Below are positions 26,831 to 55,745 of a DNA stretch of 64,000 bases, piece after piece. A program made the translations under genes and the position numbers. Numbering within the stretch: the first letter of the stretch is position 1; the number at the start of each line of letters is the position of its first letter. Source of the DNA: Macrostomum lignano (lineage: Eukaryota); the NCBI GenBank assembly GCA_002269645.1, contig NIVC01002323.1, positions 1 through 64,000 on the forward strand. The letters are read 5' to 3'. The notes beneath the pieces are model-generated. The model was not told where the DNA came from. It searched no databases and saw only the letters and a list, made by a program, of their open reading frames with translations.

Positions 26831-26869
26831 CGGCTTATCATCAAGTAGCTTCATGCCCCGAATCGTTGC

Positions 26870-28071: not shown

Positions 28072-29229
28072 TCACTGTACTAGAATCTCAAACTCCATCA
28101 TAGAGTAGTGCGTCCCAAATGGATGTTTCCTTATTATGCCGTTTCTAGCTTGTGTGTTCAGAGCCTCAGGTGGGTTGTAGTATAAGCCGTTAGGGCTGTA
28201 CATGTAGGTAGGTGCGTAGCAATATGTAAACCACCAGCCTCCTTTGTAGTCGGAGCTGCAGTGATATGAACTTTTATCGTTGTCAGAATCTAAGGTGCTG
28301 AACATGGCTCCATTGTGCGAAACAAAATTGTCATACATGACAGGATCGCTGCCATGGAAACCGGAGACATTCAAACGGAATTTGTCGGCCTCGCTGGCCA
28401 CGGAGAAGCTGGAGTAGTCGGCCCAGAACTCCGTGCCATTCCACAGCCTCATTCGCATGCGAAGTGCTCGACCAGACGGCCAGGTCAGAGAGTGCACAGC
28501 TCGCAGACCTGCAGTTGTCAAGCAGAGCTCAATGCTGAGCAGCTCACAGCCACAGGAGGCCAGCGCTATCAAAAAGTGCATCAATACCGTCATGACCGCA
28601 CTGCACTGCACTCACCGAGCCAGTGGTTCGTGTGGGCTCCCTCTCCGAAGCCGGCTGCGTACTCGGTCCAGTTGCGATAGAAGTCTGTCGAGTTGTCCAC
28701 CCGACGCTGGATGCTGATCCAGCAGTCGCTGAGTGACGTCACAAACACCTGCAGTGAGGCATTGAGAGCTGCGGTCAGGCAAGTGCTGTCAGTTACCTGG
28801 CTGTCAGGTGAGTCAGTGCACGCTTGCTACTCACCCTGATGCAGCACGGAGACTGGTGAGTGTGAGGCGTCAGTCTGCGACACACAGCGCCACTTCGGTT
28901 TGCTGGAATGCAAATGAGCTCAGCTGGGTGAGCAGCTTCATCAGGTTTAAGGCATCGAGCATGCAGCCAGGACTCACTCACCCACGATGCACTGGGGCTG
29001 CTGAGCACCGTCTCGAGGGATGAAGACCAGCAGCTGGTGAGCGAGCAGGTGCTTGGCAGCCTGTGCAGCGCACTGCAGCACATCGCTGGCTTGGTTGATG
29101 GAGGAGACGAAGAAGTGGCGGACTCGACCGCCCGACCAGCTGCTGCTGTGCACCTCGAAGAGCTCAGCTCTGTTTTTAGCTACCGCAACTGGGATCATCA
29201 CGGGTTAGAAACAGCTTTGTAATGATCAT
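28072..29229 (-). CDS. Fibrinogen-related domain protein A (FReD/ficolin-like); exons 29229-28982, 28923-28835, 28748-28616, 28508-28072; one +1 indel in the signal peptide
   Basis: FBG domain motifs WISIQRRVDNSTDFYRNWTEYAAGFG..HWLG|LRAVH, FRLNVSGF, HNGAMFSTLDSDND and C..YKGGWWF..C...PNGLY. Splice phases are consistent. The signal peptide MIITKLFLTVMIPVAVA is restored by removing one base from the run at 29202-29204. Confidence 0.9.
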
Positions 29230-29974
29230 TCTCACGTTTAGTTGGTAATCAAAATTGTGCGTATAATAATATACGAATTCTGCTAAGCTGCTGCTGGCTG
29301 CATGAAACTGTTTATATCTGTTTCGATCAGCTCCTCGGATGCTTTCATTTTGAAAGGTCTAGTATAGTAGTTAGTATTGAAGAGAAAAAATAGCCATTTG
29401 GCTGCAGTTCGTCATCGATCGGCACGCAATGGGACGTAAAGTGTTGTCTCAGTAACAATTGTCAATAACTCTTTACTTTCTTTGCTTGAGGTCCTATGTT
29501 GGAGAAACGCATTCTGCTTTCATGCTTGCAGCTCTCGTGGTACCGGAGCGTGGCAAGGAAAATTCTCCCGATAGACCTCACTTTTGTTTTCTCATAAGTC
29601 TGACAATTGCAAGGTGACTTCATCCCAGACGCCGTGGCGTGGCGGGCATTCGCTGCACGACCTGACGCTTGTCGCTCATGGCACTGTGTTGATGAAATAC
29701 AAAAAATATTCTTGGCAACATGGCCGCTACTTGCTTCATGCCTATAGAATCTTACACTCGTCAGGTGACGAATTTCTTTTGTTTTACGGTATTGATGCAC
29801 GGCATTGAGGAAACCCTTGACTTGAATTGATCGACAATTGAAATACAGTTGTCCTAATGCCCCCAGCTCGGGGTAAGTCCGATGCTGGCCGCAAGCATTT
29901 CCCGTTGGGCCCCTAAGCCTTTACAGTTTTGTATTGCAAACGACTACAGCTCAAGTCGATGCGGTGTGTACCTT

Positions 29975-30240
29975 TTCTCTCCTTCTCTCCTCTCCTCTCC
30001 TCTCCTCTCCTCTCCTCTCCTCCTCTACTCTCTTCTTCTTTCCTCTTCTCCTTTCGTCTCCTCTCCTCTCCTCCTCTCCCCTCCTCTCCTCTCCCCTCCT
30101 CTCCTCTCATCTCCTCTCCCCTCCTCTCCTCTCATCTCCTCTCCCCTCCTCTCCTCTCCCCTCCTCTCCTCTCCCCTCCTCTCCCCTCTTCTCCTCTCCT
30201 CTTCTCTCCTCTCCTCTCCTCTCCTCTCCTCTCATCTCCT
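29975..30240. repeat. (CCTCT)n pentanucleotide repeat
   Basis: Direct observation. Confidence 0.95.
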
Positions 30241-30489
30241 GTGCTTCGTGCTTCGTTCTAAATGGCCATATACTTCGTATGATCGAGCTCTATATATTGC
30301 TGAACGGAAAGTTAACTTTCCCAGCTCATTTACAAACAGTAATTTTCACGCATCTAAAAACCTAGGCCGACTAAAGTAGGTAAATAAACGGGAAACTGTG
30401 TTTCTTGGAAAATCTTTCTTGAAGTCTCGATGTAGGAAAAAAATCTACGCATTTAATTTTAGTTTAACATACATAAGGGATGAATTTTT

Positions 30490-30818
30490 ATCGAAATCAG
30501 ACCGATTTCCTGCTTTCAATATGATACTTACTTGGTAATAAAAATAATAATATTGTTGTACCTGCTGTGCTTCTCCGGCTGTCTGGCACAGTGATTTGGG
30601 CTCTCCGTCTTCTCAACCGGAAGCCTTCTCGTAGCTCTTAGTAGCGTAGGTAGTGCTGCCACCAGGACCTTTCTGATTTCTGATCGAATGGTGCAAGTTC
30701 GAAGAAAATCGGTTGAGTCGTTTTTTTCTGAAATCGATCGCATACCTACCGACCATTTTTATTATATTGGCCGTCGCTTGCGGGGTCCCCGGGCAGAGTG
30801 CGCCAGGCACTATTTTTA
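30490..30818 (+). mobile_element. Possible non-autonomous Helitron/Helentron-type (HINE-like) element
   Basis: TGCAAGTTCGAAGAAAATCGGTTGAGTCGTTT..CATTTTTATTATA segment, an 8-bp inverted repeat (30501-30508 and 30706-30713), and a terminal hairpin AGTGC-GCCAG-GCACT followed by a T-run. Confidence 0.3.
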
Positions 30819-32079
30819 GAAACATGAGTCACTCCTTTCCTTAGAGAAAGGAACTGGGCCTCAGGCACGTGATTTCCCTCGTAAACATATACAAATGAGT
30901 GCAGTAAACATCGTTGTCAGTACTCTTAAACTGGACTTCAGCTTTAGGACTTCGCGAACTTCATGACTTGCTCACCAGCCACCAGCACGACCTCAGGACG
31001 ATAATAAAAGAAGAGAAAAGAAGAGATGCCACAATGCCAGTGGCTGTTCGCAGGGGCTTCTTGTCGTAACGCCCTGGGCAACATTGTTCCACAGTTAACG
31101 GTTACTAAAGAGTCAATTCTGCCCATTCCGCTGACTCCTGAGTGGTAGTTAATTAGTTAATGTTGTAGTTAATCTCTAAAACTTACGAGTCAGGCTCTAA
31201 CAAAGTACCTGCACCTGGAGTAGATTTTAAAGGTTAGATATTGTCAAATTAGGTGCCTGTGGCTCGAAAGCTTTAGTAGTCCAGAGAATTATCGAATAGA
31301 ACTAATGCTATTCTGTATAGTGATTGCATGAAAGCAAGAGAAAAGTCAAGTTTTTAGGTGTATTCTGAGATTGTAAAAAAGCTTGTCAACTTTGCACAGG
31401 TTAAGCAAAATCTATACATTTTTACTTAATCTATGCTCAGAGAGGTTGAAGGTACTAGAACAAGACTGGACTCAGCTATTCCGATTGCCTTAGCTTATCG
31501 TATTTGTGCGGTTGAAAAAAAGATCAGTTGAAAAAAAAGAGTTGCGTAAAACGGCTCAGTTAAAACAATTGCAGATGCACTTTAAACTTGACGCTGGTTC
31601 ATTCCCTTATCTAATATCTAATTCTAACTTTTTGCTGGCTAAAAGTGGACCATAATATATTGGCTTCCAGGTAAATATTTTCGACAGCCAGAGGTGGCTG
31701 GCGCAAGCGTAAAAAGCCGCAATTATCTCAATTAGATGCACCACCCTTATCTCTAAGAAGCCGGTTTTCCAGAACCGGTCCCTTGATTGCGCATGCAGTC
31801 AGCGAACCAAGTTTTCAACCTTTTTTAGCTCAATTCTTTCGTTGGGCCGATTTCCTCAGCTAGGGTTTCTTTCTTACTTGGTTTTGCTAAGTTGAAAAAT
31901 GGTTAAAACAGGCGCGCACTTTAAAAAGGTTTAAAGCATTTTAAAAGAGCAATGAACTTTTAGCAATTAGTTCAATGTCATATCGCCAAACAATTACAAT
32001 TACAACTTACCAGCAGGTGTTTTTGGGAATAGGCCCGGGGTCACTGATTTAAAAAGAGTAGTCACTAACACGGTCACAA

Positions 32080-34140
32080 ATTGGAACAGGGGTCGTTAAT
32101 TGAAATAGGGGTTATTAAATGAAACAGGGGACATTGCATGGAACAGGGGTCATTGCATTGAAAAGGGGTCATTGCATGGAACAGGGGTAATTTCATGGAA
32201 TCGGGGTCACAAATTGAAACAGGGGTCATTACTTGGATTGAAACAGGGGTCACAAATTGAAACAGGGGTCATTACTTGGATTGAAACAGGGGTCACAAAT
32301 TGAAACAGGGGTCATTACTTGGATTGAAACAGGGGTCACAAATTGAAACAGGGGTCATTACTTGGATTGAAACAGGGGTCATTACTTGGATTGAAACAGG
32401 GGTCATTACTTGGATTGAAACAGGGGCCATTACTTGGATTGAAACAGGGGTCACAAATTGAAACAGGGGTCATTACTTGGATTGAAACAGGGGTCATTAC
32501 TTGGATTGAAACAGGGGTCATTACTTGGATTGAAACAGGGGTCATTACTTGGATTGAAACAGGGGTCACTAATTGAAACAGGGGTCGTTAATTGAAACAA
32601 GAGTCATTACATGAAACAGGAGTCATCGCATGGAACAGGGGTCATTGCATGGAACAGGGGTCATTGCATGGAACAGGGGTCATTGCATGGAACAGGGGTC
32701 ATTGCATGGAACAGGGGTCATTACATGAAACAGGAGTCATCGCATGGAACAGGGGTCATTGCATGGAACAGGGGTCATTGCATTGAAAAGGGGTCATTGC
32801 ATGGAACAGGGGTAATTTCATGGAATCGGGGTCACAAATTGAAACAGGGGTCATTACTTGGATTGAAACAGGGGTCACAAATTGAAACAGGGGTCATTAC
32901 TTGGATTGAAACAGGGGTCACAAATTGAAACAGGGGTCATTACTTGGATTGAAACAGGGGTCACAAATTGAAACAGGGGTCATTACTTGGATTGAAACAG
33001 GGGTCATTACTTGGATTGAAACAGGGGTCATTACTTGGATTGAAACAGGGGCCATTACTTGGATTGAAACAGGGGTCATTACTTGGATTGAAACAGGGGC
33101 CATTACTTGGATTGAAACAGGGGTCATTACTTGGATTGAAACAGGGGTCATTACTTGGATTGAAACAGGGGTCATTACTTGGATTGAAACAGGGGTCACA
33201 AATTGAAACAGGGGTCATTACTTGGATTGAAACAGGGGTCATTACTTGGATTGAAACAGGGGTCATTACTTGGATTGAAACAGGGGTCACTAATTGAAAC
33301 AAGAGTCATTACATGAAACAGGAGTCATCGCATGGAACAGGGGTCATTGCATGGAACAGGAGTCATTGCATGAAACAGGAGTCATCGCATGGAACAGGGG
33401 TCATTGCATGGAACAGGGGTCATTGCATGGAACAGGGGTCATTACATGAAACAGGAGTCATCGCATGGAACAGGGGTCATTGCATGAAACAGGAGTCATC
33501 GCATGGAACAGGGGTCATTGCATGAAACAGGAGTCATTGCATGGAACAGGGGTCATTGCATGAAACAGGAGTCATCGCATGAAACAGGGGTCATTGCATG
33601 AAACAGGAGTCATTGCATGGAACAGGGGTCATTGCATGAAACAGGAGTCATCGCATGGAACAGGGGTCATTGCATGAAACAGGAGTCATCGCATGGAACA
33701 GGGGTCATTGCATGAAACAGGAGTCATCGCATGGAACAGGGGTCATTGCATGGAACAGGAGTCATCGCATGGAACAGGGGTCATTGCATGAAACAGGAGT
33801 CATCGCATGGAACAGGGGTCATTGCATGGAACAGGGGTCATTGCATGGAACAGGGGTCATTGCATGGAACAGGGGTCATTGCATGGAACAGGGGTCATTA
33901 CATGAAACAGGAGTCATCGCATGGAACAGGGGTCATTGCATGGAACAGGGGTCATTGCATGGAACAGGGGTCATTGCATGGAACAGGGGTCATTGCATGG
34001 AACAGGGGTCATTGCATGGAACAGGGGTCATTGCATGGAACAGGGGTCATTACTTGGAACAGCGGTCATTACTGGGATTGGAACAGGGGTCATTACTGGG
34101 ATTGGAACAGAGGTCATTACTTGGAACAGGGGTCACTTAC
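32080..34140. repeat. Complex satellite of 19- and 24-bp units sharing an AACAGGGGTCA core, with higher-order structure
   Basis: Units are GAAACAGGGGTCATTACTTGGATT, GAAACAGGGGTCACAAATT and CATGGAACAGGGGTCATTG; rare marker variants recur at 625-702 bp. Confidence 0.95.
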
Positions 34141-34320
34141 CGAATGAACCTGAACAATATTCACACCCTGACTTAATATTAATTTTAAACTTCGTTCCGT
34201 TCAACTTCGGTGTGGCCAAGTCGCGCAGGAAACTACACGTAGAAAGCACGACTCAACATAGTGACATTCGATAAGAAACTGAGCAAACTGCGACTGAGCT
34301 GCCCTCGAAAGGCCCACTTG

Positions 34321-34330
34321 TGTATATAAG
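34321..34330 (+). promoter_or_regulatory. Candidate TATA box upstream of the SLC22 gene
   Basis: TATATAAG about 105 bp upstream of the ATG at 34430. Confidence 0.3.
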
Positions 34331-34429
34331 CGGATTTAGCACGGTTAACTTTCTATTCTACTACCAAAATTCGATCTCCTGAGAGCGTGAGCATTTTAGA
34401 CCCCCCCCTGATTATCTTTACCGAGCAGC

Positions 34430-37057
34430 ATGGTGCAGCCAAACGAGGACCCAGCGGAGTCCACCGTCAACAAAAAATTGCTTTTAGAAGAAGAGGCAAA
34501 GAAAACGGAAGAGACTGGATCTAGTCAGGATGCCAATTCGTTGCCCAAGGATTCGAAGGAAGAAGGTGAACAGTGATTTGGTAAATACTATTTTTAGTTT
34601 CGGTGCCTCAACCTGATTCTTATGAAGGTTTGAACAGAATTTTAATCTTTATACCCATGAATGTATAATAAACTTATTCAATGAATAAGTATTAGACACT
34701 GACAGCCCCATGAAGACCCTGTGAAGACACTGACAACCCTATGAAGACACTGACAACCCTATGAAGACACTGACAACTCAATAAAGACACTGACAACCCT
34801 ATGAAGACACTGACAACTCAATAAAGACACTGACAACCCTGTGAAGACACTGACAACCCTATGAAGACACTGACAGCCCTATGAAGACACTGACAACCCT
34901 ATGAAGACACTGACAACCCTATGAAGACACTGACAACTCAATAAAGACACTGACAACCCTGTGAAGACACTGACAACCCTATGAAGACACTGACAACCCT
35001 ATGAAGACACTGACAACCCTGCGAAGATACAGAGAACCCTGTAAAAACACTGACAACCCTATGAGGACACTGAAAACTCTATAAAGACACTGACAGTTCT
35101 ATAGAGACACTGACAACCCTGTGAAGACACTGACAACCCTGTGAAGACACTGACAACCCAGTGAAGACACTGACAACCCTGTGAAGACACTGACAACCCT
35201 GTGAAGACACTGACAACTCAATAAAGACACTGACAACCCTGTGAAGACACTGACTGCCCTATGAAGGCTAACAACTCAATAAAAATAATTCACTGACATC
35301 ATTATAGAGGCACTTACATGTACAACCCTCATAGAAAGAGTTAAAGCCAGAAGCAATTAAACTAACTTTCATCACCTGTAATTACCGCAGACTCCGACAC
35401 CAGCAACCACAAGTTGCAACTCGAAGATCTACTCGACAAAGTCTGCGGTCCTGGCCGGTTCACCTGCCTACTTCTCGTTATCGGCTTCATTAACAACATC
35501 TGCCCGGGCGCGGTGTCCCTCGGCCACGCGCTGTTTCTGTACACGCCCAAGTTTCTGTGCGACGTCAACGCCACACTGGCTGGCCTGGCCTCACCTTCGA
35601 ATCTCCATGGCAACAGTAACGATTGCGACTTAACAGTCAGCGAAGACCAATGCAGCCTGACGCTTAGCAACTGTACCGCTTCGAATCTGCTGGGTCAGTT
35701 CGCCTGCACCGCTTGGAGCTTTGACTCTACTCACCTGGCTGTCACGGTGGTGACTCGGTTCATGCTGGTCTGCGACCGGGCTCCCCTGTCTCGCCTGCCC
35801 GCCACGCTGTACTTTGTCGGCTTCCTGATCGGCAGCACGAGCTACGGCCTGTTCAGCGACAAGATCGGCCGTCGGCTGGCCCTGCTGATTGCCACCCTGC
35901 ACCTCAGCCTGTTCGCCTTCGTGTTGGCCGTCGTGCCGACCTTCCCGCTCCTGCTGGCTGCCGAGGTGCTGGCCGGCGCGGGCACCGCCGGGGTCATCAC
36001 CGTGTCCTGCGCGCTGCTAGTCGAGCTGACGCCGAGGCGCCTTCGATCTCAGCTGCTGTTCAACGGGTCGCACGGCTGGTGCATGGGGATCCTCACGATC
36101 GGCCTGGCCGCCTGGTTCATGCCGGACTATCGACACCAGCTCGCCGCCGCCGGCTGCATCGGCCTGCTTGGCGCTATCCTGTCTCCGTTTCTGGGCGAGT
36201 CGCCTCGCTGGCTGCTGGCCACCGACCGGCACCGCCAGGCCGGCCGGGCGCTGATTCGGATTGCCGGTTTGAATCGACGCAGCGCGCCGAACGTCGAGCT
36301 GCTGCAGGGTCTGACGCCGCCAAAGACGGCAGCTACCGCCGAGTCCACCGGCATTTCTCAGCTATTCCGTAGGCCAGGACTCAGGCGCCTCACCCTGCTC
36401 AACTGGGCGCAGTTCTTCTCCATCGCCATGTGCTACTACGGAGTCGGCCTGAGCATCGGCAGCCTAGGCGGCAGCGTGGTGCTCAGCTGCATCCTCATGG
36501 CGCTGGTCGAGCCGCCCTCCCGGTTCCTGGGCGGCTTCCTGTGCACCCGCTTCGGCCGCAGGCCGGTGCTCGGCGTCTGCTTTGCCTGCATCGGCGCCGC
36601 CATCATCGCGTGCAGCCTCATCATCCAGCAGCCGGGCCTCGCCGCGGTGCGCACCGCCTGCGCCATCTTCGGCACCTTCTGGAGCTGCCTGGCCTTCACC
36701 ACCGTGTGGCTGTACGCCAACGAGGCATTCCCGACCCCGGTGAGAGCGCTGGGCGCCGGCAGCGGCTCCACTCTGGCTCGAGTTGGCGCCTTGCTCAGCA
36801 CTCTGGTTGCTATGCTGGACTCTTATTGGCCGCCGGCTCCGTTTGCCGTGTTTGGCAGCGTTGCTATGGCTACTCTGCTCGTTGTCTACCTGCTGCCGGA
36901 GACGGGGGGCATGGTGGATCTGCCGGCCACCATGGACGAGGGCGACAGGCTGGGAAGGCTCATTGGCACCGGATCTGGGAGCGGGAAGGCTGCCAAGAGT
37001 AGGGAGGTTGTGATGAAGCTGCCCGATGATGCTCAAGGCGTTCGGGAGGCTGTGTGA
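34430..37057 (+). CDS. SLC22 organic cation/anion transporter; exons 34430-34565 and 35391-37057 (600 aa)
   Basis: Motifs LEDLLDKVCGPGRF, TVVTRFMLVCDR, SDKIGRR, LGESPRWLL, RFGRRPVL and YANEAFPTPVRALG, and LLPET. A phase-1 intron (34566-35390) joins an acidic N-terminal exon to the long ORF. Confidence 0.92.
34695..35265. repeat. 20-bp minisatellite (GAAGACACTGACAACCCTAT), SLC22 intron
   Basis: About 28 copies. Confidence 0.95.
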
Positions 37058-37094
37058 GAAGATTTGAGGGCGTCTCGGGTTGAAAAGCTTTCTC

Positions 37095-37730
37095 AGACAG
37101 ATAGATCAGACTGGGGTTGGTGTCTCGGACAGATGGATCAGACTGGGGTTGGTGTCTCGGACAGAAGGAATCAGTCTGGGGTTGCTGTCTCGGAAAGATG
37201 GATCAGACTCGATTTGTGTCTCTGACAGATAGATCAGACTGGGATTTGTGTCTCTGACAGATAGATCAGACTGGGTTTGGTGTCTCGGACAGATGGATCA
37301 GACTGGGGTTGGTGTCTCGGACAGATGGATCAGACTGGGGTTGGTGTCTCGGACAGATGGATCAGACTGGAGTTGGTGTCTCGGACAGATGGATCAGACT
37401 GGGGTTGGTGTCTCGGACAGATATATCAGACTGGGGTTGGTGTCTCGGACAGATAGATTAGAGGGGGGTTGCTGTCTCGGACAGATAGATCAGACTGAGG
37501 TTGGTGTCTCGGACAGATAGATCAGACTGGGGTTGGTGTCTCGGACAGATAGATTAGAGGGAGGTTGGTGTCTCGGACAGATAGATCAGACTGGGGTTGG
37601 TGTCTCGGACAGATAGATTAGACTGGGGTTGGTGTCTCGGACAGTTAGATAGCTGATGTCTCGGACAGTTAGATAGCTGGTGTCTCGGACAGTTAGATAG
37701 CTGGTGTCTCGGACAGATAGATCAGAGAGA
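37095..37730. repeat. 32-bp minisatellite (TGTCTCGGACAGATGGATCAGACTGGGGTTGG)
   Basis: About 19 copies, ending in shorter variants. Confidence 0.95.
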
Positions 37731-38419
37731 GGGTTGGCTACAGCAGTAAAGATTGTTTCTTTTCTATTTTAAATATTTGCACAAACTTTTATTACCATTT
37801 TTCGGTTTATTCTTTATTTGCGAGAACCGCGAGAATATTTTTTTTTTGATTTCGAATTCATTATAAAATTTGTTAAAATTGCTGTAAAAATTAGTCAACA
37901 ATTTTTATATTTTTAATTGCTTTTCTGCTCTACTGTCACGCTTTGTTATATTAGTAGTATGTTGTGGGCATTTTGCTATTTCGTCAAAATGACAAAATGC
38001 ACGGCAACGGCAAGAAGATAAGAAATAAAAATTAATTGTTTTGCTTGACTCTGTAAAGCATAGAAAAACTATTCTGTCCCAGAATGTGCTGTATATGCTG
38101 TCTTCAGTTGCAAATCAACAACACAGTATTCTAATAAAAAACTACTAATTGAAATTATATTGAACGTCACGAAAATACAAAACCGAAAAACAAAATATGC
38201 AAGCTTTGTCGGCTGAAAAAATATGCAATCTCTTCAAGGGAAACTCAACCTAAAATTATCGTGGATTTCTGTGAGAGAGAAAACTCTCGATTCCCCCTCA
38301 TTTTAGAATTTCCTTAGCCATCGGGGTTCCCACATGTTACGATTCTTCGTACAGTTACAAGAATTTAACCAGGTTCCCCATTGTTATAACTCGTTTCAGT
38401 CATCGGCGTTCCTCCATTT

Positions 38420-39110
38420 TTTGGGATTCCCCTCAGTCATTAGGATTCACTTGTCATTAGAATTCCCCTTAGTCATTGGGATTCCCCTTAGTCATTTGGA
38501 TTCTCCACATTCATTGGGATTCCCCTCAGTCATATCGATTCCCCTCAGTCATTAGGATTCCCCGCAGTCATTAGGATTTCCCTCAATCATTGGGATTCCC
38601 CTTAGTCATTCAGATTCCCCTCAGTCATCTAGATTCCCCTCAGTCAATAGGATTCCCCTCAGTCATTAGGATTAGCTTCAATCATTGGGATTCCCCAGTC
38701 ATTAGGATTCCCACAGTCATTAGGATTCACGTCAGTCATTAAGATTAACTTCAATAATTAAGATTCCCCTCAGTCAGCTGGATACCTCTCAAAAGTTGGG
38801 ATTCCTCACAGTCATTGTCATTCCCTTCAATCATTGAGATTCCCCTCAGTCATTTGGATGCTCCACATTCATTGGGATTCCCCTCAGTCATTTGGATGCT
38901 CCACATTCATTGGGATTCCCCTCAGTCATTTGGATGCTTCACATTCATTGGGATTCCCCTCAGTCATTTGGATGCTCCACATTCATTGGGATTCCCCTCA
39001 GTCATTTGGATGCTCCACATTCATTGGGATTCCCCTCAGTCATTTGGATGCTTCACATTCATTGGGATTCCCCTCAGTCATTTGGATACTCCACATTCAT
39101 TTGGATTCCC
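38420..39110. repeat. GATTCCCCTCAGTCAT repeat grading into a 38-bp unit (GATTCCCCTCAGTCATTTGGATGCTCCACATTCATTGG)
   Basis: Short degenerate units at 38420-38830; 7 clean 38-mers at 38836-39105. Confidence 0.9.
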
Positions 39111-39189
39111 CATTTTTTCATTTCAAGATTCTCGTTAATCATTTTGATTTCAGTATTTGGGATCCCCTTCAATCTGGCAATCCTGCCAA

Positions 39190-44210
<5,021 letters not shown>

Positions 44211-44340
44211 GCTGTCCTCAGTTGACCCCTGGGCAACGGGTTGAAGTGACTCTCATTCAGACTGAGATGGGATCCAGAGTAATTAAATCGAATTAGAGCA
44301 TAATGGCACTCTGAATAGGAGTAAAAGGCGTGAAGACTAC

Positions 44341-45140
44341 AGCTGAGATTAGATATCACGATGAGATTCAAGCTCAGATTAGATATCACGATAAGATTCA
44401 AACTGAGATTAGATATCACGATGAGATTCAAGCTGAGATTAGATATCCCGACGAGATTCAAACTAGACTAGATATCACAATGAGATTTAAACTAGATTAG
44501 ATATCACGATGAGATTCAAGCTCAGATTAGATATCACGATAAGATTCAAACTGAGATTAGATATCACGATGAGATTCAAGCTGAGATTAGATATCCCGAC
44601 GAGATTCAAACTAGACTAGATATCACAATGAGATTTAAACTAGATTAGATATCACGATGAGATTCAAGCTCAGATTAGATATCACGATGAGATTCAAGCT
44701 CAGATTAGATATCACAATGAGATTTAAACTAGATTAGATATCACAATGAGATTCAAGCTGAGATTAGATATCACGATGAGATTCAAACTAGACTAGATAT
44801 CACGATGAGATTCAAGCTCAGATTAGATATCACGATGAGATTCAAGCTCAGATTAGATATCACGATGAGACTCAAGCTGAGATTAGATATAGGTTTCAAG
44901 CTGAGATTAGATACCACTATGAGATTCAAACTAGATTACATATCACGATGGGATTCAAGCTGAGATTAGATATCACGATGAGATTTAAGCTGAGATTAGA
45001 TATCATGATGATATTCAAGTTTAAATTAGATATCACGATGAGATTTAAGCTGAGATTAGATAGCACTATGAGATTCAAACTCCACGATGAGATTCAAACT
45101 AGATTACATATCACGATGGGATTCAAGCTGAGATTAGATT
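44341..45140. repeat. 30-bp minisatellite (GAGATTAGATATCACGATGAGATTCAAGCT)
   Basis: About 26 copies. Confidence 0.95.
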
Positions 45141-45550
45141 AAAACAGTGCAAAAGACACTTGCCAGGTAAAAAAATAGTTTATGCTTCAAGGCCTCAGCA
45201 GCGCTGCCAGCTAAAGTCAATCTCGCTGATTGACAGGGCTGTTCCAAAGAATAGAAAATTCTAATCCCACAGGAGATGGGAATTGCTAAAACCTAATCAA
45301 GTATAGCAATAGGAGACTGTCGCCAGACCTAACAGGACCTGCGGTAACAGGACCAGAGGACGGCCTTTGATTAGTTTGTCTTCGATAAGAGCAGGTCGCT
45401 ATAAGCGTTGGATTCTGGCCAAAAAACCGCGGTTTTCCAGCTCTTCACACGGCTGCCTAAATCAACTAAAGCATCGGATTGCTCACGGACCAATGATTTG
45501 CTGCCAGCCACACCCGACCTCCATGCATCCCGGATTGGGTGCCAGGCAGG

Positions 45551-48500
45551 CAGTCAGTCAGTCAGTCAGTCAGTCAGTCAGTCAGTCAGTCAGTCACCCA
45601 CTCACTCAAGTCAGTCAGTCAGTCAGTCACCCACTCACTCAAGTCAGTCAGTCAGTCAGTCAGTCAGTCAGTCAGTCAGTCAGTCACCCACTCACTCAAG
45701 TCAGTCAGTCAGTCAGTCAGTCAGTCAGTCAGTCAGTCAGTCAGTCAGTCAGTCAGTCAGTCACCCACTCACTCAAGTCAGTCAGTCAGTCAGTCAGTCA
45801 GTCAGTCAGTCAGTCAGTCAGTCAGTCACCCACTCACTCAAGTCAGTCAGTCAGTCAGTCAGTCAGTCAGTCAGTCAGTCAGTCAGTCAGTCAGTCAGTC
45901 AGTCAGTCAGTCAGTCAGTCAGTCAGTCAGTCAGTCAGTCAGTCAGTCAGTCAGTCAGTCAGTCAGTCAGTCAGTCAGTCAGTCAGTCAGTCAGTCAGTC
46001 AGTCAGTCAGTCAGTCAGTCAGTCAGTCAGTCAGTCAGTCAGTCAGTCAGTCAGTCAGTCAGTCAGTCAGTCAGTCAGTCAGTCAGTCAGTCAGTCAGTC
46101 AGTCAGTCAGTCAGTCAGTCAGTCACCCACTCACTCAAGTCAGTCAGTCAGTCAGTCAGTCAGTCAGTCAGTCAGTCAGTCAGTCACCCACTCACTCAAG
46201 TCAGTCAGTCAGTCAGTCAGTCAGTCAGTCAGTCAGTCAGTCAGTCAGTCAGTCAGTCAGTCAGTCAGTCAGTCAGTCAGTCAGTCAGTCAGTCAGTCAG
46301 TCAGTCAGTCAGTCAGTCAGTCAGTCAGTCAGTCAGTCAGTCAGTCAGTCAGTCAGTCAGTCAGTCACCCACTCACTCAAGTCAGTCAGTCAGTCAGTCA
46401 GTCAGTCAGTCAGTCAGTCAGTCAGTCAGTCACCCACTCACTCAAGTCAGTCAGTCAGTCAGTCAGTCAGTCAGTCAGTCAGTCAGTCAGTCAGTCAGTC
46501 AGTCACCCACTCACTCAAGTCAGTCAGTCAGTCAGTCAGTCAGTCAGTCAGTCAGTCAGTCAGTCAGTCACCCACTCACTCAAGTCAGTCAGTCAGTCAG
46601 TCAGTCAGTCAGTCAGTCAGTCAGTCAGTCAGTCAGTCAGTCAGTCAGTCAGTCAGTCAGTCACCCACTCACTCAAGTCAGTCAGTCAGTCAGTCAGTCA
46701 GTCAGTCAGTCAGTCAGTCAGTCAGTCAGTCAGTCAGTCAGTCAGTCAGTCAGTCAGTCAGTCAGTCAGTCAGTCAGTCAGTCAGTCAGTCAGTCAGTCA
46801 GTCAGTCAGTCAGTCAGTCAGTCAGTCAGTCAGTCAGTCAGTCACCCACTCACTCAAGTCAGTCAGTCAGTCAGTCAGTCAGTCAGTCAGTCAGTCAGTC
46901 AGTCAGTCAGTCAGTCAGTCAGTCAGTCAGTCAGTCAGTCAGTCAGTCAGTCAGTCAGTCAGTCACCCACTCACTCAAGTCAGTCAGTCAGTCAGTCAGT
47001 CAGTCAGTCAGTCAGTCAGTCACCCACTCACTCAAGTCAGTCAGTCAGTCAGTCAGTCAGTCAGTCAGTCAGTCAGTCAGTCAGTCAGTCAGTCAGTCAC
47101 CCACTCACTCAAGTCAGTCAGTCAGTCAGTCAGTCAGTCAGTCAGTCAGTCAGTCAGTCAGTCACCCACTCACTCAAGTCAGTCAGTCAGTCAGTCAGTC
47201 AGTCAGTCAGTCAGTCAGTCAGTCAGTCAGTCAGTCAGTCAGTCAGTCAGTCAGTCAGTCAGTCAGTCAGTCAGTCAGTCAGTCAGTCAGTCAGTCAGTC
47301 AGTCAGTCAGTCAGTCAGTCAGTCAGTCAGTCAGTCAGTCAGTCAGTCAGTCAGTCAGTCAGTCAGTCAGTCAGTCAGTCAGTCAGTCAGTCAGTCAGTC
47401 AGTCAGTCAGTCAGTCAGTCAGTCAGTCAGTCAGTCAGTCAGTCAGTCAGTCAGTCAGTCAGTCAGTCAGTCAGTCAGTCAGTCAGTCAGTCAGTCACCC
47501 ACTCACTCAAGTCAGTCAGTCAGTCAGTCAGTCAGTCAGTCAGTCAGTCAGTCAGTCACCCACCCACTCACTCAAGTCAGTCAGTCAGTCAGTCAGTCAG
47601 TCAGTCAGTCAGTCAGTCAGTCAGTCAGTCAGTCAGTCAGTCAGTCAGTCAGTCAGTCAGTCAGTCAGTCAGTCAGTCAGTCAGTCAGTCAGTCAGTCAG
47701 TCAGTCAGTCAGTCAGTCAGTCAGTCAGTCAGTCAGTCAGTCAGTCACCCACTCACTCAAGTCAGTCAGTCAGTCAGTCAGTCAGTCAGTCAGTCAGTCA
47801 GTCAGTCAGTCAGTCAGTCAGTCAGTCAGTCAGTCAGTCAGTCAGTCAGTCAGTCAGTCAGTCAGTCAGTCAGTCAGTCACCCACTCACTCAAGTCAGTC
47901 AGTCAGTCAGTCAGTCAGTCAGTCAGTCAGTCAGTCAGTCAGTCACCCACTCACTCAAGTCAGTCAGTCAGTCAGTCAGTCAGTCAGTCAGTCAGTCAGT
48001 CAGTCAGTCAGTCAGTCAGTCAGTCAGTCAGTCAGTCAGTCAGTCAGTCAGTCAGTCAGTCAGTCAGTCAGTCAGTCAGTCAGTCAGTCAGTCAGTCAGT
48101 CAGTCAGTCAGTCAGTCAGTCAGTCAGTCAGTCAGTCAGTCAGTCAGTCAGTCAGTCAGTCAGTCAGTCAGTCAGTCACCCACTCACTCAAGTCAGTCAG
48201 TCAGTCAGTCAGTCAGTCAGTCAGTCAGTCAGTCAGTCAGTCACCCACTCACTCAAGTCAGTCAGTCAGTCAGTCAGTCAGTCAGTCAGTCAGTCAGTCA
48301 CCCACTCACTCAAGTCAGTCAGTCAGTCAGTCAGTCAGTCAGTCAGTCAGTCATTCAGTCAGTCAGTCAGTCAGTCACCCACCCACTCACTCAAGTCAGT
48401 CAGTCAGTCAGTCAGTCAGTCAGTCAGTCAGTCAGTCAGTCAGTCAGTCAGTCAGTCAGTCAGTCAGTCACCCACTCACTCAAGTCAGTCAGTCAGTCAG

Positions 48501-50453
48501 TCAGTCAGTCAGTCAGTCAGTCAGTCAGTCAGTCAGTCAGTCAGTCAGTCAGTCAGTCAGTCAGTCAGTCAGTCAGTCAGTCAGTCAGTCAGTCAGTCAG
48601 TCAGTCAGTCAGTCAGTCAGTCAGTCAGTCAGTCAGTCAGTCAGTCAGTCACCCACTCACTCAAGTCAGTCAGTCAGTCAGTCAGTCAGTCAGTCAGTCA
48701 GTCAGTCAGTCAGTCAGTCAGTCAGTCAGTCAGTCAGTCAGTCAGTCAGTCAGTCAGTCAGTCAGTCAGTCACCCACTCACTCAAGTCAGTCAGTCAGTC
48801 AGTCAGTCAGTCAGTCAGTCAGTCAGTCACCCACTCACTCAAGTCAGTCAGTCAGTCAGTCAGTCAGTCAGTCAGTCAGTCAGTCAGTCAGTCAGTCAGT
48901 CAGTCACCCACTCACTCAAGTCAGTCAGTCAGTCAGTCAGTCAGTCAGTCAGTCAGTCAGTCAGTCAGTCAGTCACCCACTCACTCAAGTCAGTCAGTCA
49001 GTCAGTCAGTCAGTCAGTCAGTCAGTCAGTCACCCACTCACTCAAGTCAGTCAGTCAGTCAGTCAGTCAGTCAGTCAGTCAGTCAGTCAGTCAGTCAGTC
49101 AGTCAGTCAGTCAGTCAGTCAGTCAGTCAGTCAGTCAGTCAGTCAGTCAGTCAGTCAGTCAGTCACCCACTCACTCAAGTCAGTCAGTCAGTCAGTCAGT
49201 CAGTCAGTCAGTCAGTCAGTCAGTCAGTCAGTCAGTCAGTCAGTCAGTCAGTCAGTCAGTCAGTCAGTCAGTCAGTCAGTCAGTCAGTCAGTCAGTCAGT
49301 CAGTCAGTCAGTCAGTCAGTCAGTCAGTCAGTCAGTCAGTCAGTCAGTCAGTCAGTCAGTCAGTCAGTCAGTCACCCACTCACTCAAGTCAGTCAGTCAG
49401 TCAGTCAGTCAGTCAGTCAGTCAGTCACCCACTCACTCAAGTCAGTCAGTCAGTCAGTCAGTCAGTCACCCACTCACTCAAGTCAGTCAGTCAGTCAGTC
49501 AGTCAGTCAGTCAGTCAGTCAGTCAGTCAGTCACCCACTCACTCAAGTCAGTCAGTCAGTCAGTCAGTCAGTCAGTCAGTCAGTCAGTCAGTCAGTCAGT
49601 CAGTCAGTCAGTCAGTCAGTCAGTCAGTCAGTCAGTCAGTCAGTCAGTCAGTCAGTCAGTCAGTCAGTCAGTCAGTCAGTCAGTCAGTCAGTCAGTCAGT
49701 CAGTCAGTCAGTCAGTCAGTCAGTCAGTCAGTCAGTCAGTCAGTCAGTCAGTCAGTCAGTCAGTCAGTCAGTCAGTCAGTCAGTCAGTCAGTCAGTCAGT
49801 CAGTCAGTCAGTCAGTCAGTCAGTCAGTCAGTCAGTCCCACAGTCAGTCTCAAGTCAGTCAGTCAGTCAGTCAGTCAGTCAGTCAGTCAGTCAGTCAGTC
49901 ACCCACTCACTCAAGTCAGTCAGTCAGTCAGTCAGTCAGTCAGTCAGTCAGTCAGTCAGTCAGTCAGTCAGTCAGTCAGTCAGTCAGTCAGTCAGTCAGT
50001 CAGTCAGTCAGTCAGTCAGTCAGTCAGTCAGTCAGTCAGTCAGTCAGTCAGTCAGTCAGTCAGTCAGTCAGTCAGTCAGTCACCCACTCACTCAAGTCAG
50101 TCAGTCAGTCAGTCAGTCAGTCAGTCAGTCAGTCAGTCAGTCAGTCACCCACTCACTCAAGTCAGTCAGTCAGTCAGTCAGTCAGTCAGTCAGTCAGTCA
50201 GTCAGTCAGTCAGTCAGTCAGTCAGTCAGTCAGTCAGTCAGTCAGTCACCCACTCACTCAAGTCAGTCAGTCAGTCAGTCAGTCAGTCAGTCAGTCAGTC
50301 AGTCACCCACTCACTCAAGTCAGTCAGTCAGTCAGTCAGTCAGTCAGTCAGTCAGTCAGTCACCCACTCACTCAAGTCAGTCAGTCAGTCAGTCAGTCAG
50401 TCAGTCAGTCAGTCAGTCAGTCAGTCAGTCAGTCAGTCAGTCAGTCAGTCAGT
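45551..50453. repeat. 4.9-kb (GTCA)n array punctuated by about 45 copies of CACCCACTCACTCAAG
   Basis: Direct observation; explains the three ~1700 aa SQSV ORFs. Confidence 0.99.
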
Positions 50454-50814
50454 ATTTTTTAACTGTCTCTAAAACGGTGTGGGAAACAAATTGTTAAAAA
50501 AGAAGAGTAAGAGAGAACTTAAGCGGGCCACAACACGTTCCACTGCGTGCTCTCCGCAAATCAAGTATTTGAGTAGCCTGTATTTGCTCATTTTGCATAT
50601 GCGGCATGCATGAGACTCGCTATGGACGAACTAAACTTCCTAGATTAGCTTAGCTATGCACGAAGGAAGATTAAGAGCTAAGTTCGGTAGCCGTCTGCAG
50701 AAACAGCCAGATTAAAGTGGATGAAGCTGCAGTCCCAGTTGACTCAAGAGTCTTACTACTTCGAGTATATGATGTAGCGCGGGTTGCGGAGGCGCTGAAG
50801 CCGAGAAGAGGGGT

Positions 50815-50920
50815 GTCAGAGAGGGGTGTGTGTCCGAGGGGTGTCATAAACTGACTCAGTGTGTGTCCGAGGGGTGTCATAAACTGACTCAGTGTGTGTG
50901 TCAGAGGGGTGTCATAAACT
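50815..50920. repeat. 33-bp short tandem repeat (GTGTGTCCGAGGGGTGTCATAAACTGACTCAGT), 2-3 copies
   Basis: Direct observation. Confidence 0.85.
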
Positions 50921-51024
50921 CATTCTCAAACACATCTATGTGCCAAAAATTTGTCAGAAACCGTACTGTTAAAATGTGTTGTTGTCATGGTAACGAATCT
51001 GAACAAGTGCTTTCAGACGTTGTT

Positions 51025-51535
51025 CAACCAATCAATCAATCGATCAATCAATCAATCAACCAATCAACAAATTAATCAATTAATCAAACAATCTGCCAAT
51101 CAACCAATCAACCAATCAATCAGTCAACCAACCAATCAATCAATTAATGAATCTACCAATCTACTAACCAATCAATCAACCAATCAATTAATGAATTTAC
51201 CAATCTACCAATCGATAAATCAACCAATTAATCAACTAATCAATCAATTAATCAATCAATCAATCAACCAACCAATCAATAATCAATTAATGAATTTACC
51301 AATCTACCAATCGATAAATCAACCAATTAATCAACTAATCAATCAATTAATCAATCAATCAATCAACCAACCAATCAATAATCAATCAACCAATCAATCA
51401 ACCAATCAATTAATGAATTTACCAATCTACCAATCGATAAATCAACCAATTAATCAACTAATCAATCAATTAATCAATCAATCAATCAACCAAACAATCA
51501 ATTATTCAATTAATCAATCAATCAACACATCAGCC
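51025..51535. repeat. Degenerate (CAAT)n repeat with internal ~70-bp duplications
   Basis: The block ATGAATTTACCAATCTACCAATCGATAAATCAACC occurs three times. Confidence 0.9.
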
Positions 51536-51676
51536 AATGCAGCAATAAAACAGTCAGTAAAAATCAAAAGACAGGATATCGGGCCGAGAAAATCAATCTC
51601 AAAAAGTAAAAAAGCAAAGCAACAATAGCCGATATATTTGTCTCCGAGACACCATACCACTCAAGCTGCATAGCAA

Positions 51677-55162: not shown

Positions 55163-55604
55163 AGTACTTGAGGCCGAGGCCTATTTACATTGCCGTGTCA
55201 AACTGAAACTATTTATAATACGAAGGGACATATTACAATGAATAATTAATAGAAAGCACTCGGGGTTAATAGATCAGGAGACTGACTAATGCCGGTTTGA
55301 ACCATAGACAGATAAAATAAAAAATGACAAATTAATTTACAAGGACCACTTCTTAAATACCGCGTCGTATTCACAGGCATAAATGATAAATGTGTTACTA
55401 ACTATACTAACTAACTAACTATATAGTCCACAAACTATTAAATTTTGTGAAAAATTAGAGCTTCTGCTCTTTTCTCAGTAGTTAATCTGTACAGGATCAT
55501 AATAATTTAATGTGGTAGCTAAAATCCCCTTCCTTTCTGTGGGGTTGAGCATTGCAAGCATTAACTCGGTGTACACACGTGAACGCAAGACGAACGAAAA
55601 TCAG

Positions 55605-55745
55605 CCTGGGGGGCAGGCCCAATCTGGCTCAGCCAATGAGAGACCAGTAAGGAGAGAGATCAAAGTCAGACGGCCTAGTCCTAGGGGGCAAGCCCAATCT
55701 ATCTCAGCCAATTAGAGAGCATTAAGGAGAGAGAGATCAAAGTCA
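55605..55745. promoter_or_regulatory. Tandemly duplicated ~75-bp module, each copy with two CCAAT boxes, about 450 bp upstream of the KH-like gene
   Basis: CCAAT at 55619, 55633, 55694 and 55708; AGCCAATGAG matches the NF-Y consensus. Confidence 0.5.

What the first reader, a model, noticed from the sequence alone, without database searches (positions are those of the whole stretch)
28384..29156. Inverted fibrinogen-related gene pair sharing a 773-bp near-identical tract with divergent ends (gene conversion or module swapping)
Seen in sequence: 29156->28384 (minus) aligns without gaps to 62750->63522 (plus) with 5 mismatches (99.4%), three of them in the first ~50 bp. The tract includes all three introns. 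Identity stops abruptly inside exon 1 (the signal peptides are unrelated) and inside exon 4 after EAD. Beyond that the proteins are clearly paralogous but very different: YDNFVSHNGAMFSTLDSDNDKSSYHCSSDYKGGWWFTYC versus GDCMAFHNGMKFSTHDKDNHASRRNCAKKFRGSWWYSAC. A simple recent duplication would not give mid-exon breakpoints with old divergence on both sides. Established: the C-terminal P subdomain of FBG domains carries the Ca2+/ligand-binding site in ficolins, and snail FREPs diversify partly by gene conversion. Inference: a constant N-terminal module is being homogenised or exchanged between genes with different recognition tips, a candidate immune-diversification system. The 33.6-kb inverted repeats could also invert the intervening block containing the SLC22, KChIP, KH-like, lipase and orphan genes.
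Basis: partly seen in the sequence, partly recalled or inferred. Interest (0 to 1): 0.82.

Follow-up and report, generated by a model that had tools for sequence, protein, structure and literature searches.

The report
Flatworm lectin genes sharing a homogenised module
Two inverted fibrinogen-type lectin genes of the flatworm Macrostomum lignano share a 773-bp stretch, introns included, that is almost identical while their sugar-binding tips are anciently different. The same constant-scaffold, variable-tip pattern runs through the whole gene family, which points to gene conversion rather than recent duplication or protein-level selection.

Summary
Minus strand 29156->28384 matches plus strand 62750->63522 over 773 bp without gaps, with 5 mismatches. 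The tract covers the end of exon 1, exons 2 and 3, all three introns and the first 125 nt of exon 4 of two Fibrinogen_C genes.

Inside the tract there are 0 synonymous differences. Just 3' of it, synonymous sites are saturated (pS 0.87) and amino-acid identity is 45%.

The window is Macrostomum lignano: gene B's product equals UniProt A0A1I8G697. In that species' proteome at least six tip types carry the same 86-aa module at 97-100% identity, while their tips are only 42-76% identical. A second subfamily has equally distant tips but a module only about 72% identical, so the module is homogenised within one group. One member (P0025) is a statistically supported mosaic of two tip types.

Best explanation: region-restricted interlocus gene conversion (concerted evolution) of the A plus B subdomain scaffold, with the Ca2+/ligand-binding P subdomain escaping.

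An immune role, somatic diversification and inversion of the 33.6-kb spacer are untested. Gene A lacks a recognisable signal peptide in this assembly. No read data could be checked.

The parts
62750..63522 (+). Near-identical tract, copy in gene B. It covers the distal part of exon 1, intron 1, exon 2, intron 2, exon 3, intron 3 and the first 125 nt of exon 4.
   Evidence: 768/773 identical to the reverse complement of 28384-29156; I1; exon map.
28384..29156 (-). Near-identical tract, copy in gene A.
62684..63822 (+). Gene B, a fibrinogen-domain-only secreted lectin-like protein of 288 aa. Exons are 62684-62924, 63004-63071, 63158-63290 and 63398-63822. An alternative intron-1 acceptor lies 21 nt upstream, at 62983.
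   Evidence: Translation and GT-AG introns. Pfam PF00147, E 3.7e-50. The product equals M. lignano UniRef100_A0A1I8G697 (P0019) except for 7 residues (AELIRIP) from the upstream acceptor. Foldseek top hits are ficolin FBG domains, E 3e-18.
28072..29198 (-). Gene A, a paralogous fibrinogen-domain gene of 284 aa counted from the ATG at 29198. Exons are 29198-28982, 28902-28835, 28748-28616 and 28508-28072.
   Evidence: Pfam PF00147, E 4.1e-46. The closest tips are P0002/P0022, 76% identical in the variable part.
63523..63822 (+). Variable 3' part of gene B exon 4. It encodes the last B-subdomain strand, the whole P subdomain (Ca2+ motif HDKDNH, Cys pair) and the C-terminal strand.
   Evidence: Against A: 45% aa and 52% nt identity, pS 0.87, dN 0.52. 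Alignment to M-ficolin. Secondary structure.
28072..28383 (-). Variable 3' part of gene A exon 4 (P subdomain, motif LDSDND). Its composition differs from the tract: GC3 0.53 against 0.76.
   Evidence: It keeps all 15 family-invariant residues of this region.
29157..29229 (-). Gene A leader region. The first ATG (29229) opens a frame that stops after 17 codons. A 13-nt segment (29191-29203, CCGTGATGATCCC) separates it from the downstream frame and contains the in-frame ATG at 29198. Without those 13 nt the product would start MIITKLFLTVAVAKNRAELFEV, which looks like a signal peptide.
   Evidence: The anchored alignment to B's leader places a 13-nt gap there, but the score is not significant (p = 0.09 against shuffles). 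An unanchored local alignment is not significant either.
29157..62749 (.). 33,593-bp spacer between the two head-to-head genes. It holds an SLC22-like transporter (35414-37057, +), an EF-hand/KChIP-like gene (39190-39624, -), a lipase (57969-60049, +), orphan ORFs and many minisatellites.

Best explanation
Genes A and B belong to a Macrostomum lignano-specific family of secreted, fibrinogen-domain-only lectin-like proteins. Within one group of this family, a ~0.75-kb DNA module runs from just after the signal peptide to residue D189 (SEAD). It encodes the A subdomain and most of the B subdomain and includes all three introns. I propose that recurrent interlocus (ectopic) gene conversion keeps this module almost identical between loci, that is, region-restricted concerted evolution. 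The last ~300 nt of exon 4, which encode the P subdomain with the Ca2+ site and the ligand pocket, are anciently diverged and are not homogenised.

Mechanism (inferred). A break in one copy is repaired by strand invasion into the module of another copy, followed by copying without crossover. The tract ends where identity collapses, at the leader on one side and the tip on the other, because diverged heteroduplex is rejected. Selection against loss of tip diversity may also contribute. Occasional breakpoints inside the tip at conserved motifs give mosaic tips. Between inverted copies such as A and B, conversion leaves gene order intact, whereas a crossover would invert the 33.6-kb spacer.

Shown: the tract itself, saturated silent divergence beside it, the family-wide constant module with variable tips, and a mosaic member. 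Inferred: the repair mechanism, the role of selection, and a lectin or immune function.
For: (1) The tract is 773 bp with 5 mismatches. It has 0 synonymous differences in 117.7 synonymous sites and 2 differences in 272 intron nt. The adjacent 98 codons have pS 0.87 (saturated), dN 0.52 and 45% aa identity. This excludes protein-level purifying selection and a simple recent duplication.

(2) The window is M. lignano (B = A0A1I8G697). Twelve representative family proteins, falling into at least six tip types, share the 86-aa module VFVTSL..SEAD at 97-100% identity. Their tips are 42-76% identical between types.

(3) A second subfamily (P0007, P0028, P0029, P0031) has tips as distant from group 1 (48-67%) as group-1 tip types are from each other, yet its module is only 71-74% identical. 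The module is therefore not intrinsically invariant. It is homogenised within a group.

(4) UniProt gene models that read through intron 3 (ALASCGCELLSIELCLTTAG) or the tail of intron 1 (AELIRIP) give the same translation as the window in several tip types. Intron sequence is therefore shared across loci too.

(5) The three edge mismatches are variants shared with other loci. A's GGRVRHFF matches P0023 and B's GGQIRHFL matches P0016. A's KFRLNVSGFHGS just past the 3' edge is shared with types C, D', E and G. This is the patchwork expected from repeated events with different endpoints.

(6) P0025 matches P0026 at sites 90-102 and P0027 at sites 105-187, concordant at 29 of 31 informative sites (permutation p = 1.5e-4).

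(7) Tract divergence (0.65% overall; 0.28% for 62796-63522) is below the mean homeologue divergence of this neopolyploid, 2.2% genome-wide and 1.1% in CDS (PMC10733133). The last homogenisation is therefore very recent.

(8) The tract's GC3 (0.76) matches conserved genes in the window (0.74-0.81) and B's tip (0.69), but not A's tip (0.53). This suggests A received the module.
Against: - No DNA of the other family loci and no sequencing reads could be obtained. Family-level evidence is protein-level only, and it comes from gene models on a draft assembly of a neopolyploid that is known to contain collapsed or chimeric regions.
- Homology of the 5' flanks is only suggestive (p = 0.09). A non-homologous 5' breakpoint is therefore not excluded.
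- Conversion between sequences as diverged as the present flanks would be hard to start. The model needs the module to have been homogenised continuously, which is not shown.
- The donor and direction for the A-B pair are not established.
- Gene A may be a pseudogene.
Confidence: 0.8

Rival explanations
1. A one-off chimeric gene formation, that is, module swapping without ongoing homogenisation. A single recent recombination or template-switch event pasted a B-like 5' segment into an old paralogue (A), and the family pattern reflects a few such events rather than recurrent concerted evolution.
For: Only one pair can be examined at the DNA level. The 5' breakpoint sits where alignable homology ends. 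A's tip composition differs from the tract.
Against: At least six tip types and 12 or more proteins carry the same module at 97-100% identity. Edge variants are shared in different combinations. A further mosaic exists inside the tips. Many independent one-off events amount to recurrent exchange.
Confidence: 0.1
2. An assembly or polishing artefact. Two diverged paralogues were made identical over 773 bp by consensus polishing with mis-mapped reads, or by a chimeric join.
For: M. lignano assemblies are documented to contain collapsed and mosaic regions (PMC10733133). No reads could be examined. A's leader carries a 13-nt indel that could be an assembly error.
Against: Mis-mapping needs sequences that are already similar, so it cannot turn 52%-identity DNA into 99.4% identity with sharp in-frame edges. 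The two copies keep 5 differences, and 3 of these match variants seen at other loci. Gene B's product is reproduced exactly in the UniProt M. lignano proteome, and the same module recurs on at least six different tips there. The arms are separated by 33.6 kb of unique genes, unlike a fold-back read artefact.
Confidence: 0.05
3. A recent duplication followed by very strong purifying selection on the scaffold and rapid positive selection (or targeted hypermutation) on the tip.
For: The tip holds the ligand-binding P subdomain, where diversifying selection is plausible. The most variable columns cluster after the DxDxD motif and around the Cys pair.
Against: Silent sites are saturated in the tip (pS 0.87) and unchanged in the tract (0 of 118). 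The introns are 99.3% identical, the tips differ by indels, and GC3 differs. Selection on protein sequence cannot produce this. The scaffold differs by 28% between the two subfamilies, so it is not unusually constrained.
Confidence: 0.02
4. A somatic diversification system. Leaderless copies such as A would serve as donors for somatic gene conversion into expressed genes, as chicken pseudo-V genes do and as reported for snail FREP3.
For: A lacks a leader but keeps all 15 invariant tip residues. The shared module would give a homology anchor. Mosaic tips exist. Snail FREPs are reported to diversify somatically by gene conversion and point mutation (PMC7588048, PMC3313920).
Against: There are no somatic data of any kind. 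There is no high-identity anchor 3' of the tip. The mosaics seen are germline gene models. Germline concerted evolution explains everything observed.
Confidence: 0.03

Closest known systems
Region-restricted concerted evolution in immune-type multigene families, for example the CEACAM1 paralogues (PMC7042247)
   Same: Paralogues are far more alike over part of the gene than their age predicts. Gene conversion tracts include introns. Some gene parts escape homogenisation, probably through selection.
   Different: In bovine CEACAM32 the converted parts are the leader exon and introns, while the exons for the mature extracellular Ig-like domains escape. In CEACAM1, 33 and 35 the ligand-binding N domain itself is homogenised. 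Here the scaffold of a single domain is homogenised and the ligand-binding subdomain escapes, with the boundary in mid-exon.
Biomphalaria glabrata FREPs (fibrinogen-related proteins)
   Same: A multigene family with a fibrinogen domain. Gene conversion and point mutation are invoked as sources of diversity. The proteins act as lectin-type recognition molecules.
   Different: Snail FREPs carry one or two N-terminal IgSF domains, an arrangement reported only in gastropods. The flatworm proteins have no IgSF domain. In snails conversion is described as somatic and diversifying. Here the evidence is germline and the main effect is homogenisation of the scaffold.
Ficolins, tachylectin-5 and FIBCD1 (FBG-domain lectins)
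   Same: Best sequence and fold matches: M-ficolin E 1.4e-39 and Foldseek E 3e-18 with TM 0.73. The P subdomain has a Ca2+ motif and a Cys pair next to the acetyl-group binding site. The site location is my own knowledge, from Kairies 2001 and Garlatti 2007.
   Different: There is no collagen-like or coiled-coil region, so these are not ficolins. The A subdomain is atypical: VFVTSLSDCW replaces the canonical VYCDM..GGGW, and exon 2 adds extra cysteines. Binding specificity is unknown.
Human SIGLEC11 / SIGLECP16 conversion (own knowledge, Hayakawa et al. 2005; not checked here)
   Same: A lectin gene and a nearby pseudogene exchanged a 5' segment by gene conversion.
   Different: That is a single event in one pair which changed the ligand-binding domain. 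Here the conserved scaffold is shared across many loci.

Membership tests
Fibrinogen-related domain (FReD/FBG) proteins, Pfam PF00147 | Significant match to the Fibrinogen_C profile | tested here: met
   B scores E 3.7e-50 (171 bits, cut-off 22) and A scores E 4.1e-46. 68 PDB FBG chains match at E < 1e-10.
Fibrinogen-related domain (FReD/FBG) proteins, Pfam PF00147 | FBG fold | tested here: met
   The AF2 model of B gives ficolin FBG domains as top Foldseek hits (E 3e-18, TM-target 0.73). The model is only of moderate quality: mean pLDDT 62, with most of the N-terminal ~100 residues below 50.
Fibrinogen-related domain (FReD/FBG) proteins, Pfam PF00147 | P-subdomain Ca2+ motif (D-x-D-x-D) and the flanking Cys pair | tested here: met
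   A has LDSDND. All family members have C...GGWW/GSWW...C. B-type tips have H or N at the third acidic position (HDKDNH, HDKDNN), so their Ca2+ site may be altered.
Ficolins | N-terminal collagen-like region preceding the FBG domain | tested here: not met
   Pfam finds only Fibrinogen_C. Only about 25 residues lie between the leader and the start of the domain.
Gastropod FREPs | One or two IgSF domains upstream of the FBG domain | tested here: not met
   No Ig-type Pfam hit. The architecture is stated to be gastropod-specific (PMC3313920).
Gastropod FREPs | Somatic diversification of expressed sequences | not testable with these tools
   Needs amplicon or single-cell sequencing from individual animals.
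Interlocus gene conversion / concerted evolution | A tract of much higher identity than homologous flanks, extending through silent sites and introns | tested here: met
   0 of 118 synonymous sites and 2 of 272 intron sites differ in the tract, against pS 0.87 in the 3' flank. Homology of the 5' flank is only suggestive.
Interlocus gene conversion / concerted evolution | Different segments of the paralogues give incongruent relationships (mosaicism) | tested here: met
   The module is 97-100% identical while tips are 42-76% identical. The second subfamily gives the calibration. P0025 is a mosaic, p = 1.5e-4. This is protein-level evidence only.
Interlocus gene conversion / concerted evolution | Paralogues within a species are more alike than orthologues between species | not testable with these tools
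   No sequence from other Macrostomum species was reachable.

The most novel reading that the evidence does not exclude
M. lignano may keep a germline recognition repertoire built like 'constant region plus variable tip'. One fibrinogen-domain scaffold, introns included, would be kept identical across ten or more loci by region-restricted gene conversion. At least seven anciently diverged P-subdomain tips would be preserved and occasionally recombined at conserved motifs. Leaderless copies such as gene A would act as a reservoir of tips. This would be a convergent, lectin-based analogue of constant/variable receptor architecture, in a transgenesis-ready flatworm.
Probability: 0.25. Interest if true: 0.7.

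Novelty: new member of a known kind. Interest (0 to 1): 0.55.

Why it matters
Partial concerted evolution, where part of a gene is homogenised and the ligand-binding part escapes, is a recognised way for multigene recognition families to combine a conserved scaffold with diverse specificities. Clean cases with the boundary inside a single domain, and in mid-exon, appear to be uncommon (my own impression; not surveyed here).

I found no paper on fibrinogen-domain proteins of Macrostomum in the searchable library. M. lignano is inbred and transgenic-capable, and it has sister-species genomes. The decisive tests are therefore feasible: whether modules group by species and tips by type, tip binding specificities, expression on challenge, and somatic variation.

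In practice, a ~0.75-kb repeat at 99% or higher identity spread over many loci is also a hazard for assembly, read mapping and RNAi or in-situ probe specificity in this model. It is a potential substrate for inversions and rearrangements in a karyotypically unstable neopolyploid.

Tried and rejected
- DNA of other family loci. The look-up of encoding contigs for P0019 returned nothing, and a protein-pattern scan of metagenome contigs returned nothing. No GENECONV-type analysis on nucleotides was therefore possible beyond the A-B pair.
- Homology of the 5' flanks. MAFFT and a local alignment of 100 nt upstream showed no significant similarity. An alignment anchored at the ATG and the tract edge recovers a 13-nt gap and the shared FLTVA codons, but with p = 0.09. 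I kept this as suggestive only. The 13 nt can be phased as GT...AG but are far too short for an intron, so that reading is rejected.
- GC-biased gene conversion as the cause of the tract's high GC. This is weakened because conserved genes in the window have the same GC3, 0.74-0.81. I kept only the weaker inference that A's tip is compositionally different from its module.
- Purifying selection alone: rejected on silent-site and intron identity.
- A fold-back or missed-adapter palindrome artefact: rejected because the arms are 33.6 kb apart with unique genes between them and different flanks.
- A transposable-element origin of the module. tblastn with the transposase-fused model P0016 hits only the two lectin genes in the window, and the tract edges are in frame within coding sequence. 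Rejected.
- Structure model. The N-terminal ~100 residues are low confidence, so I did not use the model to define the A subdomain. No coordinates are returned, so variable positions could not be mapped in 3D.
- Literature searches for Macrostomum or flatworm FReDs found nothing specific.

Full report
**1. Observation**

The window contains one long inverted repeat that is not simple sequence. Its arms are 28341-29156 and 62750-63565, 816 nt at 98%, 33,593 nt apart. Base by base, minus 29156->28384 equals plus 62750->63522 at 768 of 773 positions without gaps. The mismatches are at 62781, 62783, 62795, 62994 and 63381. Upstream of 62750 ungapped identity is at background. Downstream of 63522 it decays to paralogue level.

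**2. Gene models**

- Gene B (plus strand) has exons 62684-62924, 63004-63071, 63158-63290 and 63398-63822. It encodes 288 aa with a normal leader, MNQLLAFLTVALTTTSAAV.
- Gene A (minus strand) has the co-linear exons 29198-28982, 28902-28835, 28748-28616 and 28508-28072, encoding 284 aa.
- Both match Pfam Fibrinogen_C, at E 4e-50 and 4e-46, and match nothing else.
- They are the only such genes in the window.
- The best solved relatives are the ficolin FBG domains (M-ficolin, E 1.4e-39). An AF2 model of B (mean pLDDT 62, good for residues 110-220) retrieves ficolin, angiopoietin-like and tenascin FBG domains at E ~1e-17 to 1e-18, with TM 0.73.
- There is no collagen-like or IgSF region. These are FBG-only FReDs, neither ficolins nor snail-type FREPs.

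The tract starts at codon 23 of B (EVHSSS, just after the leader) and ends after D189 (SEAD). In the model this point is the turn between strands 174-184 and 193-200. By alignment, 'EAD-K/E-F-R-L' corresponds to human fibrinogen gamma 'EADKYRL' (gamma R275). That lies about 14 residues before the P subdomain, gamma 287-379; the numbering is my own knowledge. The variable part is therefore the last B-subdomain strand, the whole P subdomain (Ca2+ motif, Cys pair, ligand pocket) and the C-terminal strand.

**3. Contrast in divergence**

| Region | Result |
|---|---|
| Tract, 167 coding codons | 0 synonymous differences in 117.7 synonymous sites; 3 non-synonymous, all in the first 46 bp |
| Tract, 272 intron nt | 2 differences |
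| 98 aligned codons 3' of the tract | pS 0.87 (saturated), dN 0.52, 45% aa identity, 52% nt identity, plus indels |

Protein-level purifying selection cannot keep introns and silent sites identical. A recent whole-gene duplication cannot have saturated silent sites next door. If the upstream intron-1 acceptor used by UniProt models is the real one, the mismatch at 62994 becomes a fourth non-synonymous change (R/C).

**4. Species and family**

All close homologues are Macrostomum lignano proteins. P0019 (UniRef100_A0A1I8G697) equals B from DVLQ to the end, apart from seven residues (AELIRIP) that come from an acceptor 21 nt upstream. The window is therefore M. lignano.

Reading the cluster members shows that the pattern is family-wide. 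The 86-aa stretch VFVTSL..SEAD is 97-100% identical in 12 representative proteins. These carry at least six distinct tips:

| Tip type | Members |
|---|---|
| A | window gene A, P0002 |
| B | window gene B, P0001, P0016 |
| C | P0026, P0004, P0024 |
| D | P0027, P0005, P0025 |
| E | P0023 |
| F, G | partial or frameshifted further types |

Between types the tips are only 42-76% identical.

A second subfamily (P0007, P0028, P0029, P0031) provides the calibration. Its tips are 48-67% identical to group-1 tips, the same range as between group-1 types, yet its module is only 71-74% identical. The module is therefore free to evolve, and it is held identical within a group.

Several UniProt gene models read through intron 3 (ALASCGCELLSIELCLTTAG) or the tail of intron 1. 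They give the same translation as the window in different tip types. Intron identity therefore also extends across loci.

**5. Patchwork**

- The three 5'-edge mismatches are not private. A's GGRVRHFF recurs in P0023 and B's GGQIRHFL recurs in P0016.
- Just past the 3' edge, A's KFRLNVSGFHGS is shared with types C, D', E and G. B's xFRLSISGFSAS is shared with the other B-type members and some D-type members.
- P0025 follows P0026 at informative sites 90-102 and P0027 at sites 105-187. This is concordant at 29 of 31 informative sites (permutation p = 1.5e-4).
- Endpoints therefore differ between events, and exchange also occurs inside the tip at conserved motifs.
- It follows that A and B need not be direct partners. 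A's module resembles the type-E gene's at both edges.

**6. Direction and age**

The tract's GC3 is 0.76. This equals conserved genes of the window (0.74-0.81) and is near B's tip (0.69), whereas A's tip is 0.53. The module in A therefore looks imported. This is a weak inference.

Tract divergence is 0.65% overall, and 0.28% from 62796 onward. This is below the mean homeologue divergence reported for this neopolyploid, 2.2% genome-wide and 1.1% in CDS (PMC10733133). The last homogenisation is as recent as the genome duplication or more recent.

**7. Gene A's 5' end**

From the first ATG (29229) the frame stops after 17 codons. The in-frame ATG (29198) gives MIPVAVAKNR.., with no hydrophobic core. 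Removing 13 nt (29191-29203) would give MIITKLFLTVAVAKNRAELFEV. This resembles the leaders of B and of P0006 (MQRLLALLTLCSVAVAAAVELHEV). The anchored alignment is not significant, however (p = 0.09).

A's leader is thus probably a disrupted homologue rather than 'unrelated', but this is not established. A keeps all 15 family-invariant residues of the tip, so it is not an old pseudogene.

**8. Mechanism**

The best-supported reading is recurrent interlocus gene conversion (concerted evolution), confined to the scaffold-coding module. I estimate its confidence at 0.8. In this reading tract ends are set by the collapse of identity at the leader and at the tip, and probably by selection for tip diversity.

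- Shown: the tract, the silent-site contrast, the family pattern and a mosaic.
- Inferred: the repair pathway, the role of selection, and lectin or immune function (by analogy with ficolins and snail FREPs).

Rivals:
- One-off chimera formation (0.1).
- Assembly or polishing artefact (0.05). M. lignano assemblies are error-prone. Mis-mapping cannot create this pattern from 52%-identity DNA, the copies keep locus-specific variants, and an independent protein set shows the same module.
- Selection or hypermutation (0.02), refuted by silent sites.
- A somatic system (0.03), for which there are no data.

**9. Comparison with known systems**

The closest principle is region-restricted concerted evolution with escape of some gene parts, as analysed for CEACAM paralogues (PMC7042247). 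The closest family context is snail FREPs, where gene conversion and point mutation are reported to diversify the genes. The flatworm proteins fail the FREP architecture test (no IgSF) and the ficolin test (no collagen). They are FBG-only FReDs with an atypical A subdomain.

I found no publication on Macrostomum FReDs. I rate the finding a new member of a known kind: a clean and testable case, moderately interesting (0.55).

**10. Not tested**

Reads and assembly correctness, DNA of other family loci, other Macrostomum species, expression, binding, somatic variation, and inversion of the 33.6-kb spacer. The spacer's genes are confirmed as an SLC22-like transporter, an EF-hand/KChIP-like gene and a lipase.

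Noticed in passing
window 29191-29229 (minus strand): Gene A's first ATG (29229) opens a 17-codon dead-end frame. A 13-nt segment (CCGTGATGATCCC, 29191-29203) shifts the frame and supplies the in-frame ATG at 29198. Without it the protein would start with a plausible signal peptide. This is either a disabling insertion (a young pseudogene) or an assembly indel.
   Followed up: partly
window 63628-63630 (gene B codon 225): B-type tips have His (Asn in P0001) at the third acidic position of the P-subdomain Ca2+ motif (HDKDNH instead of xDxDND). Their Ca2+ site and pocket geometry may differ from the other tip types.
   Followed up: no
window 62983-63003 (and 28903-28923 in gene A): UniProt gene models of the family use an intron-1 acceptor 21 nt upstream of mine, adding AELIRIP. 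Several models read through intron 3, and some through frameshifts. Annotation of this family in M. lignano is inconsistent, and the true splice pattern needs RNA data. The A/B mismatch at 62994 lies in these 21 nt.
   Followed up: partly
window 62684-63290; proteins P0001-P0031: The family's A subdomain is atypical. VFVTSLSDCW replaces the canonical VYCDM..GGGW, and exon 2 adds an insertion with extra cysteines. AF2 confidence is below 50 for most of residues 1-100.
   Followed up: partly
proteins P0007, P0009, P0028-P0031 (not in window): A second M. lignano FReD subfamily has its own shared module, 94-98% identical within the group and about 72% identical to the first group, with tips 86-91% identical. 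It may be a separate conversion group.
   Followed up: partly
proteins P0024 and P0016 (not in window): P0024 is a fused model of two type-C genes in tandem. P0016 fuses a B-type gene to retroelement and DDE_Tnp_4 transposase-like sequence. Other family loci therefore lie in tandem arrays or beside mobile elements. No such element lies next to gene B in this window.
   Followed up: partly
window 45543-50453: A 4.9-kb (CAGT)n microsatellite of about 1,217 copies at 94% match creates spurious ORFs of about 1,700 aa.
   Followed up: no
window 558-59352 (many sites, e.g. 3107-4130, 9599-10482, 21561-22388, 25440-26835, 32079-34135, 41003-41991): The window is crowded with minisatellite arrays (periods 13-58 nt, 0.3-2 kb each). 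(TATC)n at 8480-8919 and (TAGA)n at 43500-43854 form the other 'inverted repeats' that the repeat finder lists.
   Followed up: no
window 58437-59352: A 24-nt minisatellite (about 38 copies) sits inside the lipase gene, between its Abhydro_lipase/Abhydrolase_1 exon (57969-~58430) and a downstream exon (59411-60049). It stays open in the upstream exon's frame. Whether it is intronic or coding is unknown.
   Followed up: no
window 26870-27352 (+): A 160-aa ORF with a glutaredoxin domain (Pfam E 8e-7) and a C-terminal Cys-rich tail lies about 0.7 kb downstream of gene A's stop codon, just after the 29-nt minisatellite.
   Followed up: no
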